DNA of 32,000 nucleotides from Wallemia ichthyophaga EXF-994 (Eukaryota > Fungi > Basidiomycota), in the NCBI RefSeq assembly GCF_000400465.1, contig NW_008806294.1, positions 30,001-62,000 of the forward strand, read 5' to 3'. A model generated the notes under the pieces. That model did not search any database, was not told the DNA's origin, and worked only from the letters and a program-made list of their open reading frames with translations. This document shows, piece after piece, positions 24,933-32,000 of this stretch (the stretch's first letter is position 1; every line of letters begins with the position of its first letter). The position numbers were made by a program, and so were the translations under genes.

Positions 24933-25005
24933 CGTCGTAACTCAACGATGATTTTTTCTACACGCGCAAATATCAATAAATATAAAATCAATTATTAAGA
25001 CATTC

Positions 25006-27007
25006 TCACTCAACATCCCACAGCTCATCCACCCTCACCAACCCACACGCCATTCCCGACGCCAGCAATGCCGCGCGATCACTATCTGGGTTCCACCTAA
25101 GAATGCGCACAGCAGATTCAGCCGGGAAAGGAGCTGCGTATTTACCCAGTTCCTCTCTAGGATGTTTCTCAACCGCGTTGCCAACCTTATTGCCTTTACC
25201 TTTGTCCGTACCCTCTCGATCGCGGTTACTAGGAGGGTTGAGGTGATCAATCATGCGATAAAGCTCTTCACTACGACCGAACTCCACCGCGAAGAGGTCC
25301 ATTGAGTAATAAACCTGCAGACGTCTCGACCGTGCATGCACAATTGCGAGCGGGTTAACCACCTCCACGTGTCCATTCGACCCAGCCACCGCTACGAAAG
25401 GGTGACAAGTAGAAGTGGCTATACTGAGAACTGCGCAGGCGAAATCGGTAAGTTGGGAACCACGTTTGTAATCGCTAGCTAGTAAGCCCTGTGCGACTAC
25501 CGTGTTCTCCCCATTCGCACTAACCATGGCGTTAAGGTGGATAGAGTACCCGACTGTATACGCCACACCACGTATGTGGTCAAACAGAGTCACAGAACCG
25601 CCACTCCCACTCCCACTACCCGCTAGACGCACATCCGTTATGCAGATACTGCCGTCGTAGGCTGACGTGAGCAACTGCGTGTATTCCGCCCGTGGCCCTG
25701 TACTGAGAGTGGGTAAGAGCGTCTTGTGCGTTGTGCTTTCTTCACTTTTATTTTCACCTCCATCTCCTCGAGCCATCTCGTGAGGCGTTATCGCCACCCA
25801 TTGCATACCGTTTATGCCACCCATATGTACATCTATGTATGAGCTTGGCCGGATACTCATACGCCTTTCTCTAAGTGCGGCGCGCAAGTCGTATACAGCC
25901 ACTGCACCGTTAGAGAAACCGACAGCGAGGCGGTTAGAGCTAGCCCATTCGCACGTGAGGCCTTTAGAGGGGGGAGTTTGCATGACAAGGGTAGATGCAG
26001 GAGGGTTCAGGAAGAGGACCTCGCTATCACCCACCCCATAGAAGCGCCGCAAGAGGAGCAAGTCGGGTATGAGCATGACTTGAGCTTGTCCGTCGTTATA
26101 AGTCGCTGCAAGTGCCCCGCTCGTCACGCGCTCGCGCTCCTGATCCCCATACTCCATATATGCAGCATCTGTAGGGCTGAATTTGACATCGAGTGCAACG
26201 CCATGAGAGTGGCAGATTACGGCGAGGAGGGTGATTGAGCAAGGTGTGATTTCTTCGTTGCCGCTCTTGTGCCGTGGCACATACCCCCATAGCTGGATTG
26301 CACTCTTGTACCCCCGCCGGTCGTGTGCGCCGATCCCGTGGGCTGTGGAGTTGTTGTTGAGCACCGATACAGCGAGGATGGAGGGTTGAATGGGTGTGTC
26401 GTTGTCAGCGCTATTCTCCGCGTGATTTATATCCTCAACCTCCACCTCCCGCCACCGCCTCTGCCAATCCAGACCCATGACGCACCCGCCAGCATTAAAG
26501 ACAGAGCCGGGGCTTTGGGAGGTGTGCTCGAGGCTGTTGCTGTGGAAGCGCGGGAAAGAGAAGGGGCGGGTAGAGTGTGTGCTGCCTGCGTGCACGTTTA
26601 TGGGAGGGTTATTCGGGAGGAAATCGTTGCCAGCATCGCTGGAAACGCGCGACCACCGATGAGTCTCGAGCCAGCGCTCCATCGCCTCTAAATCCCTGCT
26701 CGGACTATCAATCTGCACGCCACGTGGATAGATATTCGCCCGGCGTGCGAGATCGACCGAGGAGAGATAGGGGATGAGGATCTGGGCGTGGTCGGCGTCG
26801 GCGGGATCGGCGGGGAGAGTGTGTGCGGTGTGGGCGTGTGCCTCGTGCGGATGGCGCGTGTTGGATGGCCCAATGCCGAGTTGCGCCGGCGCATAGGATC
26901 CCCAGGCTGTGGGGTGTGAGCAGGCTCAGTCGTGCCGGATAGATGGCTCCCCCACGCGGATGTATCGAGTACCGGGCTTTGGATTTCTTGGAAGATGGCG
27001 TACTCAT
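25006..27007 (-). CDS. TFC6: WD40 protein, probably TFIIIC subunit Tfc6/tau91 (Sfc6, GTF3C2-like)
   Basis: The open frame extends upstream of the 570-aa ORF to an acceptor near 26908; the first exon is uncertain (ATG 27007). Motifs GGCVMGLDW, AIQLW, ICHSHGVALDVKFSP, CEWASSNRLAVGFSNG, LLTSAYDG, HPFVAVAGSNG and WNPDSDRAALLASGMACGLVRVD match my recollection of fungal Tfc6. Confidence 0.65.
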
Positions 27008-27102
27008 GACGTCGCCGTGTGTGTCCAAGAACCCCGTCTCCCCATCTTGCACCTCAGCAGCGAAGATCGAATAAAAAAATCTAAAATAATAAAAATTAGA
27101 TA

Positions 27103-28032
27103 ATGGCTGATAATACATCTCCTCCAATCGCACCCGCTGAATCTCCTTCCATTGGTGACTTTGGGATGGCAACCGTCGGCCTCGGATTGGGTGTTGCTGG
27201 GTTGGGCATATCGATGCTGCCGAACATAGCGTGTACCAGGGTCGAAGCCATGTACAAGCCAGTGAGCCAGCCGGCAACCCAGCCAGCCAAATCACGCGCC
27301 AGCTGGGACAATATCAAGCTCTACCTCAGCAAAGACATATTCAAGCCGATTCTCAGGCTGGCCGTCAGCCGCATAGCATCCGAGCGTCTCTTCGCCTTGG
27401 CGGACTACGGGCTTGCTCTGGCCCTCTCCCCAATCCTCCCATACGGCAGGCTCAACGTCAGTATCGGTCCAACCTCCATCCTGCTAGCCTACGCGCCAGG
27501 TGCATTCGCCGTGTCTTTCGCTGCTACTCTCGCTCTCGACACCATCTTCCTTCCTTTCAAGGTGGCTATGACCCGCGCCGCTCTCCTCCCAAGCAGCTCG
27601 TCGTCCTGGGACCTTTTTTCCGCGAGCGAGAGACGCGACCCGACGCAGCTCTACGCTCACCTCCTCCCATCCCTCTTCCAAACCAGCGCTATCAGCACGG
27701 GCACCAGCCTCCTCTCCTCTGCGATCCTCGCCCTCCTCCCCCCAGACAGCTTCCTTGGGCTGCCTGTTAGATTCGCAGGCATCGTCGTCAACCTCACCCA
27801 GTCTCTCGTTATGGCTAGGCTGTGCGCGCAGTACACGGGTAAAGATGAGCAGATGGACTCAGTCGTCCCTCTCCGCCCTCAACCGTACACAGGCTGGTTC
27901 CAGTGCCTCAGAACTACCATCGCTGAAGAAGGCTGGTGGTTCGCTGGCTGGGTCACCATCAACTCGGCTCTCGGTCTCGGTATGGTGGAGGTGTTGACCC
28001 AGACGCAGCAAAGTGTGGAAGCCTCGCAGTAG
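27103..28032 (+). CDS. Degenerate mitochondrial-carrier-fold (SLC25-like) membrane protein
   Basis: Intronless 309-aa hydrophobic ORF with carrier-like half motifs PFKVAMTR and PYTGWFQCLRTTIAEEG. The full Px[DE]xx[KR] triplet is not present. Confidence 0.5.
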   Translation: MADNTSPPIAPAESPSIGDFGMATVGLGLGVAGLGISMLPNIACTRVEAMYKPVSQPATQPAKSRASWDNIKLYLSKDIFKPILRLAVSRIASERLFALADYGLALALSPILPYGRLNVSIGPTSILLAYAPGAFAVSFAATLALDTIFLPFKVAMTRAALLPSSSSSWDLFSASERRDPTQLYAHLLPSLFQTSAISTGTSLLSSAILALLPPDSFLGLPVRFAGIVVNLTQSLVMARLCAQYTGKDEQMDSVVPLRPQPYTGWFQCLRTTIAEEGWWFAGWVTINSALGLGMVEVLTQTQQSVEASQ

Positions 28033-28054
28033 AACAATCATTAAGGATTAGTTA

Positions 28055-28084
28055 CAATTAGCTGCAATTAGCTGCAATTAGCTG
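28055..28084. repeat. Perfect tandem repeat (CAATTAGCTG)x3 in the gap between convergent 3' ends
   Basis: Copies at 28055, 28065 and 28075. Confidence 0.9.
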
Positions 28085-28133
28085 CAAGGCGCAAGTTGTG
28101 TATAGAAGCAACCCTAACAATACAAAGATTATA

Positions 28134-28730
28134 TCACAAATACTTGCGTGCAAATTTCTCAAGTTTTTCGCCAAATGTCTTACCCTGTATGGCATCAGTG
28201 GGTGTGTAGAACGGGTTGAGGAGTGTGTCGAGAAACACCCGCCAGCATTCCTGGAAGAAGTTTCTGATATTGTCGTCGTTGGTGACTGTGTGCAGCAGTA
28301 CGAAGCGGATCGAAGGTGTGATAAACGCACTGACTGTCCACCCGTTGAAGCTGTCGACGGATTTGTGGTACCTGCGGGGCGTAAGAATGCGTATATGCTA
28401 ACCGTACCCACTACCCATCACTCACATGCTATTCGACTTGGTTTGGATATCGTCAATGACGTCGAGAGAAGCGTGTGCGACCAAGTCCATGATATCCTGG
28501 TGCATTTGGAGTGTAGTTTGTGTAGTTTGCGTAGTTTGTGTACTCTGTGCGCCGTGTGTGCCTTGTCCACCCAGTTTACCCCCGCCTCCCCCCACCAAAG
28601 CCGATATCAGGTCCTGAGGCCCACTCACATCGCCACCGCCACCGCCACTGAACCTGGAAGACGCGTACTGAGATTTGAATATCGGGGTGTCTTGGTTATT
28701 GAGGAGGTATAAATGATAAATGGCAGCCAT
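28134..28730 (-). CDS. TRS20: TRAPP subunit Trs20 / sedlin (TRAPPC2)
   Basis: Exons 28730-28426 and 28371-28134 (intron 28372-28425). LVAHASLDVIDD...MYHKSVDSFNGWTVSAFIT...RFVLLH...NDDNIRNFFQE...LLNPFY...ARKYL. Carries a Gly-rich and TQT-repeat insertion. Confidence 0.92.
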
Positions 28731-28758
28731 GGGAGTGAGGGTACAAGGAAGTAAACAG

Positions 28759-29092
28759 TTAAATTAGAGAGCTGAGTGTTTCCTGTGTATCGTATATCGC
28801 GTCAGCACTTGCATCCGCTCCCCGCGCACACACTCAACTCACAGCCAGCGTCGTCGGATCCACGCCCTGTTCAATCACATCCAGGCTACTCGATAGCGTC
28901 TCCTTGCTTATCCCGCTATTCAACGCCTGCGATAGTTCGTAAAGCGCTGTTTTTGCTGTTATATAGCCCTGCCTAGATTATCATACACCCACCATCGAGT
29001 ACTTCCTCTGCAGCCACTGGCTTTTCTGGCTTCTCTGTCGCTGATGTTGGTACTGCCGCTGCTAGCGCGTCTTTGCTCTCTTTCGCCTCCAT
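28759..29092 (-). CDS. MZT1: MOZART1 / gamma-tubulin complex receptor Mzt1 (75 aa), not in the ORF track
   Basis: Exons 29092-28993, 28946-28843 and 28782-28759, with canonical introns 28947-28992 and 28783-28842. Product MEAKESKDALAAAVPTSATEKPEKPVAAEEVLDALYELSQALNSGISKETLSSSLDVIEQGVDPTTLAETLSSLI matches the MOZART1 pattern LxxLxExSxxLNxGxxxETLxxxxxxIExGVxPxxLA. Confidence 0.88.
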
Positions 29093-29145
29093 TTCGCTGT
29101 TTTGCTGCCTTGGTGGCTGTGACTTGTACACCTACCACCACCTCG

Positions 29146-29159
29146 ACGCGTTGACGCGT
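29146..29159. promoter_or_regulatory. Two tandem MluI cell-cycle boxes (ACGCGT) in the MZT1/CDT2 bidirectional promoter
   Basis: ACGCGT at 29146-29151 and 29154-29159, inside the 142-nt gap between ATG 29092 (-) and ATG 29235 (+). Confidence 0.65.
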
Positions 29160-29234
29160 TTTTCAACTTTCCCAAAATCCTCAAAGCACTCCGAGGACAC
29201 GCTTAAACACGTTGATAAACACTACATCCAACAC

Positions 29235-31080
29235 ATGTCGTCCACACGCGATGGCTTGCGCGAATCGATCAACCGCGGATGTGATGTCGGCGTTATTGGA
29301 AGCAGCAGCAGCAGCACTAGCAACCGCGCCACGCCCACCAAACCAAAGATCAAGCTCACTCTCGATCCCTTCTTTTTCGCGCCTAAAAATGGTTCAAAGA
29401 AGCGCAAGCAGGGTGATGACGTCGGTGAGGTGGGCGATCTGGGTGACTTGAACAAATTGCGCGATCCAAACGACACAAACGACGCAGCCCAGCGCAGCTA
29501 CTTGGATAGCACGCGTCGAGCACTCACTCCGCACGCTTACCTGACGCGCACGCGGCTGAAACACTTTGATGGGCAGCTCAGTGCGCATGCGATGGATATG
29601 TGTGGAGCATACGTAGGATCGTTTAGATCCTCAGACACTGTGCACTTCCCCAGCAGGCTCTCCACGCGAACTTACGCTCCTCCACTCACAACCGCGTTCA
29701 TTCCATCCACACGCTCCACCCCCAATCCGATACTGGCAGTGGGGGATGAGGAGGGAGGTGTGACGATGGTTGGTGTTGGAGCTGACGCGTCGCAACCACA
29801 ACCACAATCACAGCAGTCTCACTCGCACTCGACCGTCGGCTGCTTCGACGCGCACGACAACGCGATCTTCGATCTCAGCTTTAGCCGCGACTCGCTCCTC
29901 TTCGCGACAGCATCGGCTGACCAGGAGACACGAGTGTGGGACACGGCTACGCAGACACACACCGCCACCTGCCACGGCCACACAGGCTCCATCAAATCCC
30001 TCGCCTGGTCGCCCTTCTCCACGCCCATACTCGCCAGTGCGGCGCGCGATGGCTGTGAGTGAAGATCGAGGTGCTTCGTACGACACTCACGCTTCTCTGC
30101 CAGCCATTCGGATCTGGGATGCACGGACGCGGTGTCGGGGTGCGAGTGCAGTGGTCAGCGAGGCACGCAATGCACACGACTCACACGACCCATCCGAGCT
30201 AGACAGCCTGCTCACTATTGATAGGGCTCACGCATCTCTCTCCGAGCAGCGCAAACGGAGCAGCATCGGCAGGAGCATCACCCGCTCTGTAACTTCCATC
30301 ACCTTCCTACATACGCGCGACAACACTCTCGCTAGCGCTGGCTCAGCTAATGGCTCAGTCAAGCTGTGGGATGTGCGCGGCGCGAGCTCGAGCTGTCGAC
30401 AGACTACAGGTAGTGGTGCAGACACATCTACACAAAGCAAACAAAGCAAACAAAGCAAACAAGCCAAGGTGAAAAACAGACCGCTCGCTGAAACACCCGA
30501 CATGACTCAGAGTGACAGCGGGAGTGGCAGCCGACGACCGCATGGCGTTGCGCATATGGTCTCGGATGGGCAGTGGTTGTGGACTCTATGTACGAATTCC
30601 ATGTGAGTTGCATATTGAGAAACTGGCTAACTGGGCAACTAAGGCACACCCCACTAACATCTCTACCCAGCATCTACGGCTATCCGGCGAACAACCTAGA
30701 CAGTAAAGTAGACGCACCGATCCAGTTGTCAGATCCGGATATGCAGTGCGCATCTTTCTGGGTCCGGCTGGCTATTAGTCCCGATGCGCGCTATTTGAGC
30801 TGCGGGAGTACTAATGGCAAGGTGTTCAGCTGGGATATCGCCAACAGCAAGAGGATGAAAAGGTCGCAAGGGAAGGCCATCCATTTTACACATGCTAGAC
30901 AGGACCTCCTCTCACAACTCAATCAGCCCGCTAGCGCGGAAGTGGGATCACTCGATTGGGCAGACGATGTGGTGCGTGCTTGTTGCTTGTCGTGACACCC
31001 TCTCTAATCTCGTAACTCATGCACAGCTCGCTACCTGCTCGGATGATATGACTGTGCGTCTCTGGAGACCTCGGCCGTAG
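29235..31080 (+). CDS. CDT2: WD40 CRL4 substrate receptor Cdt2/DTL
   Basis: Introns 30055-30103, 30603-30670 and 30972-31026. LAVGDEEG, FDAHDNAIFDL, ATASADQ, GHTGSIKS, RSVTS, LASAGSANGSVKLWDVR, RPHG, SFWVRLAISPD and LATCSDDMTVRLWRP. Confidence 0.88.
30433..30459. repeat. (CAAAGCAAA)x3 coding repeat encoding QSKQSKQSK in CDT2
   Basis: Three perfect 9-mers. Confidence 0.9.
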
Positions 31081-31164
31081 TTTTCATATAGTTTTCATAT
31101 AGTTTACTTTATTCTACTTTACTTTACGCTGTTGACGCTGTTTAACTTGTTAGTTCTCTCATCG

Positions 31165-32000
31165 CTAATTTATATCCATTCTGCCATTTACATTTCCATC
31201 ACTATTGATGCGCCCCTCGCTGTCGAAATGGGCATGCTTCGGATGAGTCACTATCCACTCGGAGAAGAGGGATGGCGGAGTGCGGAGGAGGTGTTTCAGA
31301 CGGCGGTAAGTGTTGGATGCTTCCGAGTGCTTGAGTTGGAAGTAAGTGGGGTTGGTATTGTCGTCGGCGTCATCCTCCTTGCCGCTCTTTACGTCACTCT
31401 CCCTCTCCCTCTCTCCTTTCTTCACGCTCTTAACTCCCTTCACACATTCCAGACTGAGATAGTGCCGCATCAGGTCTAATCTGCACAAACGGGATCTGCG
31501 GGTGTTGGTGAGTGAGTGTGCGAGTGAGTGTGATTGAGGATGCAAATTTTCACTCCCCACTCACCTGTATTTCCACCAGTACGGCCCGCCGCCGCGGCGT
31601 CGGAAGTTGCCGTTCTTCAGACCCCCTATCACCAATTCTGTCTGTAGGGGTGAATCGCCTGCTACGTAGTTGGCGCAGTGCATGGCGGGAAGTACGGGTG
31701 GGTGTGGGTGTTCGTTCGCATCTTGGCTTGAACTTGCACGTGCACGCGCTTCCACCTCCTCCTTGGCGTGGCAGAAACGCACCTCCGTGAATGCGATCAC
31801 CGGTCTGTGCAAGTGCAAGTGCAAGTGCAAGTGGTCTGTTGGCGTATCCAAGCGCGATGGGCTAGCTTGAGCGCTTTCCTTCGCGCTCTCTCGCACGCTT
31901 TCCTCCACGCGTAGATAGAGTGAGCGGTGGCATTCAGAGAGGTACTTTTGGCGCCCCTCCCCATCCACACTGCTGACACCGCCGATAACAATATTGTGGA
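31165..32000 (-). CDS. TAD1: tRNA-specific adenosine deaminase Tad1/ADAT1, C-terminal part (5' end outside the window)
   Basis: Frame HNIVIGG...ELVIGGLKNG...KYR, intron 31496-31564, then RSRLCRLDL...TYFQLK...YRRLKHLL...FSEWI resembles the C-terminus of ADAR/ADAT1-type deaminase domains. The catalytic HxE and PC motifs are not in the window. Confidence 0.72.
31807..31830. repeat. (GTGCAA)x4 coding microsatellite encoding HLHLHLHL in TAD1
   Basis: Four perfect hexamers at 31807-31830. Confidence 0.9.

What the first reader, a model, noticed from the sequence alone, without database searches (positions are those of the whole stretch)
28134..29092. MZT1 stop codon only 28 nt upstream of the TRS20 start: candidate dicistronic or overlapping transcription unit
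Seen in sequence: MZT1 TAA ends at 28759 and TRS20 ATG begins at 28730 on the same strand. The spacer (CTGTTTACTTCCTTGTACCCTCACTCCC) is pyrimidine-rich, has no AG acceptor and no obvious poly(A) signal, and puts the two ORFs out of frame, so stop readthrough or simple splicing cannot fuse them. Established: polycistronic mRNAs have been reported in mushroom-forming fungi from long-read data. Inference: either one mRNA encodes both small proteins (a 75-codon first ORF could permit reinitiation or leaky scanning), or the TRS20 promoter lies inside MZT1 while the MZT1 3' UTR runs across TRS20. This would link a gamma-tubulin adaptor to a TRAPP trafficking subunit.
Basis: partly seen in the sequence, partly recalled or inferred. 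Interest (0 to 1): 0.7.

Follow-up and report, generated by a model that had tools for sequence, protein, structure and literature searches.

The report
Two tightly packed Wallemia genes
Two small, unrelated housekeeping genes of the salt-loving fungus Wallemia ichthyophaga lie head to tail only 28 bases apart, so their transcripts almost certainly overlap. This looks like a by-product of an extremely compact genome, not an operon-like link between the two proteins.

Summary
On the minus strand, MZT1 (75 aa, 3 exons, TAA at 28761-28759) is followed after 28 nt by TRS20/sedlin (180 aa, 2 exons, ATG at 28730). Both models equal the public Wallemia ichthyophaga EXF-994 annotation. Pfam, five Wallemia lineages and a spliced RNA contig from a sister species support them.

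The tandem pair is conserved across the genus, with spacers of 28, 52, 65, 70 and 70 nt, always out of frame. It is absent from the three non-Wallemia TRS20 loci examined.

A 28-nt gap cannot hold a 3' UTR, a terminator, a promoter and a 5' UTR, so the transcription units must overlap. One short-read RNA contig spans both spliced genes, but it also chains three flanking genes on both strands. It therefore does not prove a single dicistronic molecule.

Translation of TRS20 from a dicistronic mRNA looks unlikely. The MZT1 AUG has a good context in this species, intervening AUGs are not depleted, the first ORF is long, and the spacer is short and unstructured.

Most likely TRS20 has its own short-leader mRNA starting inside the MZT1 3' end, and MZT1 transcripts end in or run through TRS20. 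Interest is modest.

The parts
28993..29092 (-). MZT1 exon 1 (ATG 29092-29090; MEAKESKD...EEVLD)
   Evidence: Identical to EOQ99128.1.
28947..28992 (-). MZT1 intron 1, 46 nt, GTGGGT..ACAG
   Evidence: The intron position is shared with W. hederae, W. mellicola and locus L005, and it is removed in RNA contig L001.
28843..28946 (-). MZT1 exon 2 (ALYELSQALNSGISKETLSSSLDVIEQGVDPTTLA), the MOZART1 core
   Evidence: Pfam PF12554 covers aa 30-72. tblastn finds it in all Wallemia loci.
28783..28842 (-). MZT1 intron 2, 60 nt, GTGAGT..ACAG. It contains the last ATG (28814-28812) upstream of the TRS20 start.
   Evidence: The intron is removed in RNA contig L001.
28759..28782 (-). MZT1 exon 3 (ETLSSLI + TAA at 28761-28759). 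It is the shortest version of the conserved last helix, which reads DV(I/L)L(A/S)LRDG... in the other species.
   Evidence: It aligns to human MZT1 residues SVIKELRK.
28731..28758 (-). 28-nt inter-ORF spacer CTGTTTACTTCCTTGTACCCTCACTCCC: G-poor, 82% pyrimidine, with no AG, ATG or AATAAA
   Evidence: Its composition resembles the leaders just upstream of other W. ichthyophaga start codons.
28741..28747 (-). CTTGTAC, the only spacer element conserved in all five Wallemia lineages (CCTGTAC in W. hederae). It lies 7-15 nt upstream of the TRS20 ATG. It could be the UGUA-type upstream element of the MZT1 poly(A) signal or part of the TRS20 start-site region.
   Evidence: Shuffle test: 193 of 200000 shuffles reach the observed sharing; the statistic was chosen post hoc. 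The reading frame of the motif is not conserved, so it does not act as coding sequence.
28426..28730 (-). TRS20 exon 1 (ATG 28730-28728; MAAIYHLYLLN...). It includes a lineage-specific low-complexity insert.
28372..28425 (-). TRS20 intron, 54 nt, GTGAGT..CGCAG
   Evidence: An intron at the same position is present in genomic W. mellicola, W. hederae and L005 and removed in RNA contig L001.
28134..28371 (-). TRS20 exon 2 (YHKSVDSFNGW...ARKYL, TGA at 28136-28134)
   Evidence: Sedlin_N covers aa 67-178.
29093..29236 (.). 144-nt divergent promoter region shared by MZT1 and a DTL/CDT2-like WD40 gene (ATG 29237, + strand). It holds two ACGCGT boxes at 29146-29159.
28033..28133 (.). 101-nt gap between the convergent stop codons of TRS20 and the 309-aa ORF 27103-28032. 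It must hold both 3' ends and contains TGTA 12 nt after the TRS20 stop and a 10-nt tandem repeat.

Best explanation
These are two separate, correctly modelled genes of Wallemia ichthyophaga. MZT1 is the small gamma-tubulin-complex subunit, and TRS20/sedlin is a TRAPP subunit. Genome compaction has pushed them head to tail until only 28 nt separate stop and start.

Shown:
- The gene models.
- The 28-nt out-of-frame spacer.
- Conservation of the tight tandem pair across Wallemia (28-70 nt).
- Loss in W. ichthyophaga of the MZT1 C-terminal tail and most of the spacer, leaving little more than the one conserved spacer element.
- RNA from a sister species that covers both spliced genes and the spacer without a break.

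Inferred:
- The two transcription units overlap.
- TRS20 is translated from its own capped mRNA. That mRNA starts in the last ~80 nt before its ATG (MZT1 intron 2, exon 3 or spacer), a stretch with no ATG and the G-poor composition of other leaders in this genome. The TRS20 core promoter therefore sits inside the 3' end of MZT1.
- MZT1 transcripts are cleaved and polyadenylated just inside TRS20. The conserved UGUA in the spacer and the U/A-rich AUUUAUCAUUUAUAC...AAUAAC at TRS20 codons 4-12 are the candidate signals.
- Alternatively, MZT1 transcripts read through to the TRS20 poly(A) site. That would give a dicistronic read-through RNA from which essentially only MZT1 is translated.

Nothing points to a functional coupling of the two proteins.
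For: Gene models.

Spacer and frame in five lineages.

Compact genome:
- CDS covers 73.6% of 9.6 Mb, and the mean gap is about 373 nt (PMC3849046).
- Convergent stop codons in the neighbourhood are only 39-95 nt apart, so overlapping 3' ends are routine here.
- In Coprinopsis the median 3' UTR is 141 nt and the median 5' UTR 68 nt (PMC12230235). That is far more than 28 nt.

RNA evidence: Logan contig L001 (SRR23314750) carries intron-free MZT1 and TRS20 joined by the 70-nt spacer. The introns are present in genomic W. mellicola, W. hederae and L005.

Against translational coupling:
- AUG context and intervening AUGs at chance level.
- No RNA structure.
- No Rfam family.

TRS20 leader:
- No ATG in the 81 nt upstream of the TRS20 start codon.
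- G-poor C/A/T-rich leaders upstream of other genes' start codons.

Other points:
- Conserved YCYTGTAC element.
- TGTA lies within 70 nt after the stop codon in 8 of 15 gene ends, against 4.6 expected (P = 0.05).

Precedents: read-through RNAs over independently transcribed genes in Agaricomycetes (PMC4503453). Transcription overrun plus very short leaders in microsporidia (PMC2803860).
Against: - No transcription start site or poly(A) site has been mapped, in this species or in any relative.
- The only RNA evidence is one short-read contig from another Wallemia species. It also chains three flanking genes on both strands, so it fits overlapping transcripts, a true dicistron, or low-level pervasive transcription equally well.
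- The conserved motif has two competing readings (poly(A) element or start-site region). The TGTA enrichment is marginal, and the motif statistic was defined after seeing the data.
- Conservation of the pair in the genus could reflect selection for co-transcription rather than mere synteny.
Confidence: 0.6

Rival explanations
1. Obligate dicistronic mRNA. One promoter (the MZT1/DTL-like divergent promoter) and one poly(A) site serve both genes, and ribosomes translate both ORFs by leaky scanning or post-termination reinitiation, as in green-algal polycistronic loci.
For: - The same-strand pair and its very short spacer are conserved in five Wallemia lineages.
- The RNA contig spans both spliced ORFs.
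- The first ORF is small, as in algal polycistrons (PMC7896298).
- The MZT1 AUG context is weak in the L001 species (T at -3, T at +4) and lacks G at +4 in L005 (A at -3, T at +4).
Against: - In W. ichthyophaga the MZT1 AUG has G at -3 and G at +4.
- 2-4 out-of-frame AUGs intervene in every species, against 3.8-4.8 expected, so they are not depleted.
- Established knowledge: reinitiation after a 66-79-codon ORF across 28 nt is expected to be very inefficient.
- Inference: a stop codon followed about 330 nt later by a spliced intron, with a long downstream region, would make the RNA a likely target of nonsense-mediated decay.
- No structured element lies in or around the spacer.
- The same contig also joins genes on the opposite strand, so its contiguity is not specific to this pair.
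Confidence: 0.14
2. Two non-overlapping units with extremely short untranslated regions. MZT1 would be polyadenylated and TRS20 initiated both within the 28-nt spacer, as in microsporidia, where 5' UTRs are under 7 nt.
For: - Microsporidian precedent of leaders under 7 nt, with a C-rich motif next to the ATG (PMC2803860).
- The spacer ends in CTCACTCCC directly before the ATG.
- In W. mellicola and the L001 species the longer 70-nt spacer contains TATATA and AATAA-like elements that could terminate MZT1 there.
Against: - 28 nt must hold the upstream poly(A) elements, the cleavage site and the start site.
- Polymerase II continues past the cleavage site before it terminates, so transcription would overlap the TRS20 start in any case.
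- The W. ichthyophaga spacer has no A-rich or AAUAAA-like element.
Confidence: 0.1
3. A chimeric MZT1-TRS20 fusion protein made by alternative splicing, as in the 227-aa gene calls for 21 W. ichthyophaga strains. In those calls the MZT1 exon 2 donor at 28842 is joined to an AG acceptor, with the exon resuming at 28667.
For: NCBI proteins such as E3P94_03170 carry both Pfam domains. The junction uses a GT and an AG and is in frame.
Against: - Those calls come from MAKER without RNA evidence (PMC6738226).
- The fused calls in W. mellicola (245 aa) and W. hederae (272 aa) use entirely different junctions.
- The W. ichthyophaga acceptor is not conserved in the other species.
- The fusion would delete the last MZT1 helix and the first strand of the sedlin fold.
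- The RNA contig shows the unfused splice form.
Confidence: 0.03
4. Gene-model error. MZT1 would really end at ...TTLAVS* (TGA 28836-28834) without intron 2, so the true gap would be 103 nt and less remarkable.
For: An in-frame TGA follows two codons after the exon 2 donor. Intron retention is the commonest alternative-splicing event in this fungus (PMC3849046).
Against: - Exon 3 is conserved in all five lineages and encodes the conserved last helix, which aligns to human SVIKELRK.
- The Pfam match runs into exon 3 (aa 30-72).
- Intron 2 is spliced out in RNA contig L001.
- Even at 103 nt the transcription units would still overlap.
Confidence: 0.03

Closest known systems
Read-through 'polycistronic' transcripts of Agaricomycetes (Gordon et al. 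2015, PMC4503453)
   Same: Both are basidiomycete cases of adjacent same-strand genes, each with full coding potential, covered by continuous RNA. In that study the genes were also transcribed independently, and read-through was proposed to interfere with the downstream gene. That is the picture favoured here.
   Different: - Those cases were shown with single-molecule reads. Here there is only a short-read contig from a sister species.
- Wallemiomycetes lie outside Agaricomycetes, where the authors saw conservation of such pairs decline.
- The 28-nt gap leaves no room for separate UTRs, so overlap is forced rather than optional.
Overlapping and multigene transcripts of compacted eukaryotic genomes (microsporidia; Peyretaillade et al. 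2009, PMC2803860)
   Same: - Very short intergenic spacers.
- Transcription overrun into the next gene.
- Downstream genes that still have their own mRNAs with very short leaders.
- A C-rich motif directly upstream of the ATG.
   Different: - Wallemia is a free-living basidiomycete with a 9.6-Mb genome and normal intron density, not a parasite with a 2-3-Mb genome.
- Start sites have not been mapped.
- The conserved element here is YCYTGTAC, not the CCC/AAATTT signals.
True polycistronic loci of green algae (Gallaher et al. 2021, PMC7896298)
   Same: - A small upstream ORF and a short inter-ORF distance.
- ORFs out of frame.
- The pair is conserved among related species.
   Different: - Algal loci have one promoter, one poly(A) tail, near-perfect co-expression and demonstrated translation of both ORFs. 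None of this is shown here.
- The upstream AUG context is good in W. ichthyophaga, and AUGs are not depleted.
- The median algal inter-ORF distance is 212-260 nt, not 28 nt.

Membership tests
MOZART1 / MZT1 (Pfam PF12554) | Sequence match to the family profile above the curated cut-off | tested here: met
   49.7 bits against a cut-off of 27, E = 3e-13, aa 30-72 on profile positions 2-44 of 47.
MOZART1 / MZT1 (Pfam PF12554) | Small protein (about 60-85 aa) whose helical core aligns with solved MZT1 structures, including the last helix | tested here: met
   The Wallemia MZT1 profile matches human MZT1 6x0u_A residues 4-69 at 1.4e-10. Exon 3 aligns to SVIKELRK.
Sedlin / TRAPPC2 / Trs20 (Pfam PF04628) | Sequence match above the curated cut-off, with the conserved N-terminal strand starting at residue 2-3 | tested here: met
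   107.7 bits against a cut-off of 23.1. The N-terminus MAAIYHLYLLN lines up with MAYYLVLVG and MSYYLAIVG of other fungal Trs20 proteins.
Read-through polycistronic transcripts (Agaricomycete type) | Single RNA molecules that span two or more complete ORFs | tested here: inconclusive
   Short-read contig L001 spans both spliced ORFs. It also spans genes on the other strand, so it may be a chain of overlapping transcripts. No long reads were available.
Read-through polycistronic transcripts (Agaricomycete type) | Each gene is also transcribed on its own | not testable with these tools
   This needs TSS and poly(A) mapping. There is only indirect support: an ATG-free, G-poor 81-nt stretch upstream of the TRS20 ATG.
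True polycistronic loci (green-algal type) | One promoter, one poly(A) site and equal abundance of both ORFs | not testable with these tools
   No expression data for this locus could be reached.
True polycistronic loci (green-algal type) | The sequence permits the ribosome to reach ORF 2: a weak upstream AUG context and few intervening AUGs | tested here: not met
   The W. ichthyophaga MZT1 AUG has G at -3 and G at +4. There are 2-4 intervening AUGs per species against 3.8-4.8 expected.
True polycistronic loci (green-algal type) | The gene pair is conserved across related species | tested here: met
   Met within the genus only: five Wallemia lineages. Absent in an Auriculariales locus, two other fungal TRS20 loci and a distant MZT1 locus.
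Compacted-genome overlapping transcription (microsporidian type) | Intergenic spacers too short for separate UTRs, in a genome of very high gene density | tested here: met
   The spacer is 28 nt. Neighbouring gaps are 39-143 nt. The genome has 514 genes/Mb and is 73.6% CDS.
Compacted-genome overlapping transcription (microsporidian type) | Mapped start sites a few nt upstream of the ATG, and 3' ends inside the next gene | not testable with these tools
   No 5' or 3' end data were available.

The most novel reading that the evidence does not exclude
The MZT1-TRS20 pair would be a genuine dicistronic mRNA conserved across the genus in a basidiomycete outside the Agaricomycetes. Both proteins would be translated, and the conserved YCYUGUAC element 7-15 nt upstream of the TRS20 AUG would retain or recruit the ribosome after MZT1 termination. 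This would be a cellular termination-reinitiation signal, one that W. ichthyophaga has trimmed down to a 28-nt minimal spacer.
Probability: 0.1. Interest if true: 0.6.

Novelty: new member of a known kind. Interest (0 to 1): 0.3.

Why it matters
If the favoured reading is right, this is a clean, minimal example of how far tandem genes can be squeezed in a free-living fungus. One gene's promoter would sit inside the last intron or exon of its neighbour, and that neighbour's 3' end would sit inside the first codons of the next gene.

The practical value is twofold:
- It warns annotators. MAKER fused these two genes in three Wallemia species, each time in a different way.
- It offers a compact 28-nt test case for terminator and promoter signals in Wallemiomycetes.

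Only if both proteins turned out to be translated from one mRNA would it bear on the wider question of eukaryotic polycistrons. No biological link between gamma-tubulin nucleation and TRAPP trafficking is implied by the data.

Tried and rejected
I did not try another route. The cluster table shows these exact proteins only in the NCBI reference contig, so no Logan RNA contig of this species appears to be indexed.
2. The first homology search with the 75-aa MZT1 found only a genomic exon-1 ORF. A profile of five Wallemia MZT1 proteins added only W. mellicola genomic contigs and one distant MZT1.
3. CTTGTAC as a general Wallemia start-site motif:
   - It occurs 9 times in the window against 3.5 expected.
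   - Seven of the nine copies lie away from any annotated start codon; several fall inside long ORFs.
   - It is absent upstream of the other start codons.
   - I rejected it as a general promoter motif.
4. An N-terminal extension of TRS20 through the spacer is open in three species. In W. ichthyophaga it is blocked by a TAA 11 codons upstream, and the motif's frame differs between species. Rejected.
5. Synonymous-site constraint at TRS20 codons 1-12: only TTA TAC is invariant, which is too little to argue from.
6. IRES or structured RNA: fold z-score 0.40 and no Rfam hit.
7. ORFs on the opposite strand or in other frames (28098-28712 +, 28776-28976 +, 28058-28411 -) have no Pfam match.
8. Strain polymorphism: no differences in 28731-28842 between the window and two other strains. 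At about 1% divergence this is uninformative.
9. Literature: no paper links MZT1 with bicistronic expression. The MOZART1/polycistronic co-mentions listed are unrelated to such a link, a combined MZT1/TRAPPC2/sedlin/dicistronic query listed nothing relevant, and a Wallemia/polycistronic query listed no Wallemia paper.
Full report
**What is there**

The finding lies on the minus strand of the window. Splicing the obvious GT..AG introns gives two proteins.

- A 75-aa protein from three exons: 29092-28993, 28946-28843 and 28782-28759, with TAA at 28761-28759.
- A 180-aa protein from two exons: 28730-28426 and 28371-28134, with TGA at 28136-28134.

The introns are 46, 60 and 54 nt. That fits the 61-nt mean reported for this genome (PMC3849046).

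Pfam assigns the first protein to MOZART1 (49.7 bits, cut-off 27) and the second to Sedlin_N (107.7 bits, cut-off 23.1).

It is 82% pyrimidine, contains no AG, ATG or AATAAA, and puts the ORFs out of frame.

**Whose genome, and is the model right**

The TRS20 protein is 99% identical to Wallemia ichthyophaga proteins. The cluster holding those proteins also holds the reference annotation of strain EXF-994: EOQ99127.1 (180 aa, 'Transport protein particle 20 kDa subunit') and EOQ99128.1 (75 aa, 'Mitotic-spindle organizing protein 1'). Both are identical to my models.

That annotation was made ab initio with GeneMark-ES, so it is not independent RNA evidence. Independent support comes from relatives:

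- W. hederae (L002, genomic).
- W. mellicola (L006/L007, genomic).
- An unnamed Wallemia (L005, genomic).
- A fourth relative represented by Logan contig L001 from SRR23314750.

L001 is RNA-derived. In it MZT1, TRS20 and the neighbouring WD40 gene are uninterrupted ORFs. The genomic loci of the other species carry introns at the same positions as W. ichthyophaga.

MZT1 exon 3 is conserved. It reads ETLSSLI* here and DV(I/L)L(A/S)LRDG...* elsewhere. It aligns to the last conserved helix of human MZT1, SVIKELRK.

**Comparative anatomy**

The MZT1-to-TRS20 tandem pair is present in all five Wallemia lineages. Stop-to-start distances are 28 nt (W. ichthyophaga), 52 nt (L005), 65 nt (W. hederae), 70 nt (W. 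mellicola) and 70 nt (L001). None is a multiple of three.

The distance from the intron-2 acceptor to the TRS20 ATG is 52 nt in W. ichthyophaga and 91-125 nt in the others. This species has therefore lost the MZT1 C-terminal tail and most of the spacer.

What remains is essentially the one element conserved in all spacers: a pyrimidine run ending in CTTGTAC (CCTGTAC in W. hederae), 7-15 nt upstream of the ATG. The motif's reading frame differs between species, so it acts at the nucleotide level. A shuffle test gave 193 of 200000, though the statistic was chosen post hoc.

Outside Wallemia the adjacency was not found:

- No MZT1 within 3 kb upstream of TRS20 in an Auriculariales genome.
- None called next to TRS20 in two other fungal TRS20 loci.
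- No TRS20 next to a distant MZT1.

**Context**

W. ichthyophaga has one of the most compact basidiomycete genomes: 9.6 Mb, 514 genes/Mb and 73.6% CDS. That implies a mean CDS-to-CDS gap of about 373 nt.

In the 21 kb around the locus the gaps are as follows:

| Orientation of neighbours | Gaps between CDS ends (nt) |
|---|---|
| Convergent | 39, 91, 95, 273, 844 |
| Divergent | 94, 98, 143, 286 |
| Other same-strand pair | 402 |

Overlapping 3' ends must therefore be commonplace in this genome. The 28-nt tandem gap is the extreme of a general tendency.

**Transcription**

A 28-nt gap cannot contain a 3' UTR with its poly(A) signals, a termination zone, a core promoter and a 5' UTR. For scale, Coprinopsis has a median 3' UTR of 141 nt and a median 5' UTR of 68 nt (PMC12230235). 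The two units must overlap.

L001 shows continuous RNA from spliced MZT1 through the spacer into spliced TRS20. But the same 4.7-kb contig also joins an upstream gene, the divergent WD40 gene and the convergent downstream gene. It is therefore what a de Bruijn assembler makes from overlapping transcripts of both strands. It does not prove single dicistronic molecules.

Fused MZT1-TRS20 gene calls exist in the population genomes: 227 aa in W. ichthyophaga, 245 aa in W. mellicola and 272 aa in W. hederae. They come from MAKER runs without RNA evidence (PMC6738226). Each uses a different junction, so they are artefacts of the tight spacing.

**Translation**

If TRS20 depended on a dicistronic mRNA, ribosomes would have to scan past MZT1 or reinitiate after it. 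The sequence argues against both.

- In W. ichthyophaga the MZT1 AUG has a purine at -3 and G at +4.
- Two out-of-frame AUGs lie between the start codons.
- Across four species there are 2-4 intervening AUGs against 3.8-4.8 expected, so they are not depleted.
- From established knowledge of eukaryotic initiation, reinitiation after 66-79 codons across 28 nt is expected to be poor.
- As an inference, a dicistronic RNA whose first stop codon is followed by a spliced intron would be a likely substrate of nonsense-mediated decay.
- The region has no unusual structure (z = 0.40) and no Rfam match.

By contrast, the 81 nt upstream of the TRS20 ATG contain no ATG. The spacer also has the G-poor C/A/T-rich composition seen just upstream of other start codons in this genome. 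Both fit a short private leader.

**Most likely mechanism (inferred, about 0.6)**

TRS20 is transcribed from a start site within the last ~80 nt of MZT1. MZT1 transcripts are cleaved just inside TRS20 or run on to the TRS20 poly(A) site as a read-through by-product.

The conserved UGUA-containing motif may be the upstream element of the MZT1 poly(A) signal. TGTA occurs within 70 nt after the stop codon in 8 of 15 gene ends against 4.6 expected, with P = 0.05, which is only suggestive. The motif could equally belong to the TRS20 start region.

This matches the read-through-plus-independent-transcription picture of Agaricomycetes (PMC4503453). It also matches the overrun-plus-short-leader picture of microsporidia (PMC2803860). 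It fits the single-promoter polycistrons of green algae less well (PMC7896298).

**Verdict**

- The either/or interpretation is partly supported, with the 'overlapping units' branch favoured over the 'one mRNA, two proteins' branch.
- The suggested functional link between gamma-tubulin and TRAPP is not supported.
- This is a new example of a known phenomenon in a lineage where it has not been described. The full-text searches turned up no paper on polycistronic or overlapping transcription in Wallemia.
- Decisive data, namely TSS and poly(A) mapping or long reads, could not be obtained here.

Noticed in passing
window 29145-29160 (between MZT1 ATG 29092 on - and WD40 gene ATG 29237 on +): Two ACGCGT boxes (GACGCGTT x2, resembling MluI cell-cycle boxes) sit in the 144-nt divergent promoter. 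The WD40 gene's orthologue best matches human DTL/CDT2 (9c5t_A, 3.3e-37). ACGCGTGAA also lies just upstream of the MZT1 ATG in L001, L002 and L005. This hints at G1/S-type co-regulation of MZT1 and a Cdt2-like gene.
   Followed up: partly
window 28047-28087: A 10-nt tandem repeat, ATTAGCTGCA x4.1, lies in the 101-nt gap between the convergent stop codons of TRS20 and the 309-aa ORF. Two other W. ichthyophaga strains (L009, L010) have one unit fewer.
   Followed up: partly
window 28480-28670 (TRS20 exon 1): A lineage-specific low-complexity insert (GGGGG, GGGGG, QTTQTTQTT; 9-nt repeat at 28511-28542) sits between the conserved N-terminal strand and the HQDIMDLVAHASLD helix of the sedlin fold. 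The other Wallemia species carry a different, Ser/Pro/Ala-rich insert at the same place.
   Followed up: no
window 1-32000: GC content steps from about 0.41-0.51 (mostly 0.43-0.49) over 1-25000 to 0.49-0.60 (mostly 0.53 or more) over 25001-32000. No explanation was sought.
   Followed up: no
window 27103-28032 (+); L001 3588-4487 (-); L002 4151-5158 (-): A 299-309-aa protein conserved in Wallemia, convergent with TRS20, has no Pfam match.
   Followed up: partly
NCBI proteins E3P94_03170, E3P99_02104 and W. mellicola 'Sedlin' TIB69977 etc. (P0002, P0004, P0019): Population-genome annotations fuse MZT1 and TRS20 into one gene in three species, through three different junctions. This is probably one of many such merges behind the drop from 4884 to about 4188 predicted genes.
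   Followed up: yes
L001 1-4487 (Logan SRR23314750_59024): One RNA-derived contig chains five fully spliced genes lying on alternating strands. It implies overlapping 5' ends of a divergent pair (111 nt between the ATGs) and overlapping 3' ends of two convergent pairs in this Wallemia species.
   Followed up: partly
window 28955 versus 28946 (MZT1 intron 1 acceptor): A second in-frame AG nine nt upstream would add Ala-Lys-Thr to MZT1. The orthologues and the reference model favour the downstream acceptor.
   Followed up: partly
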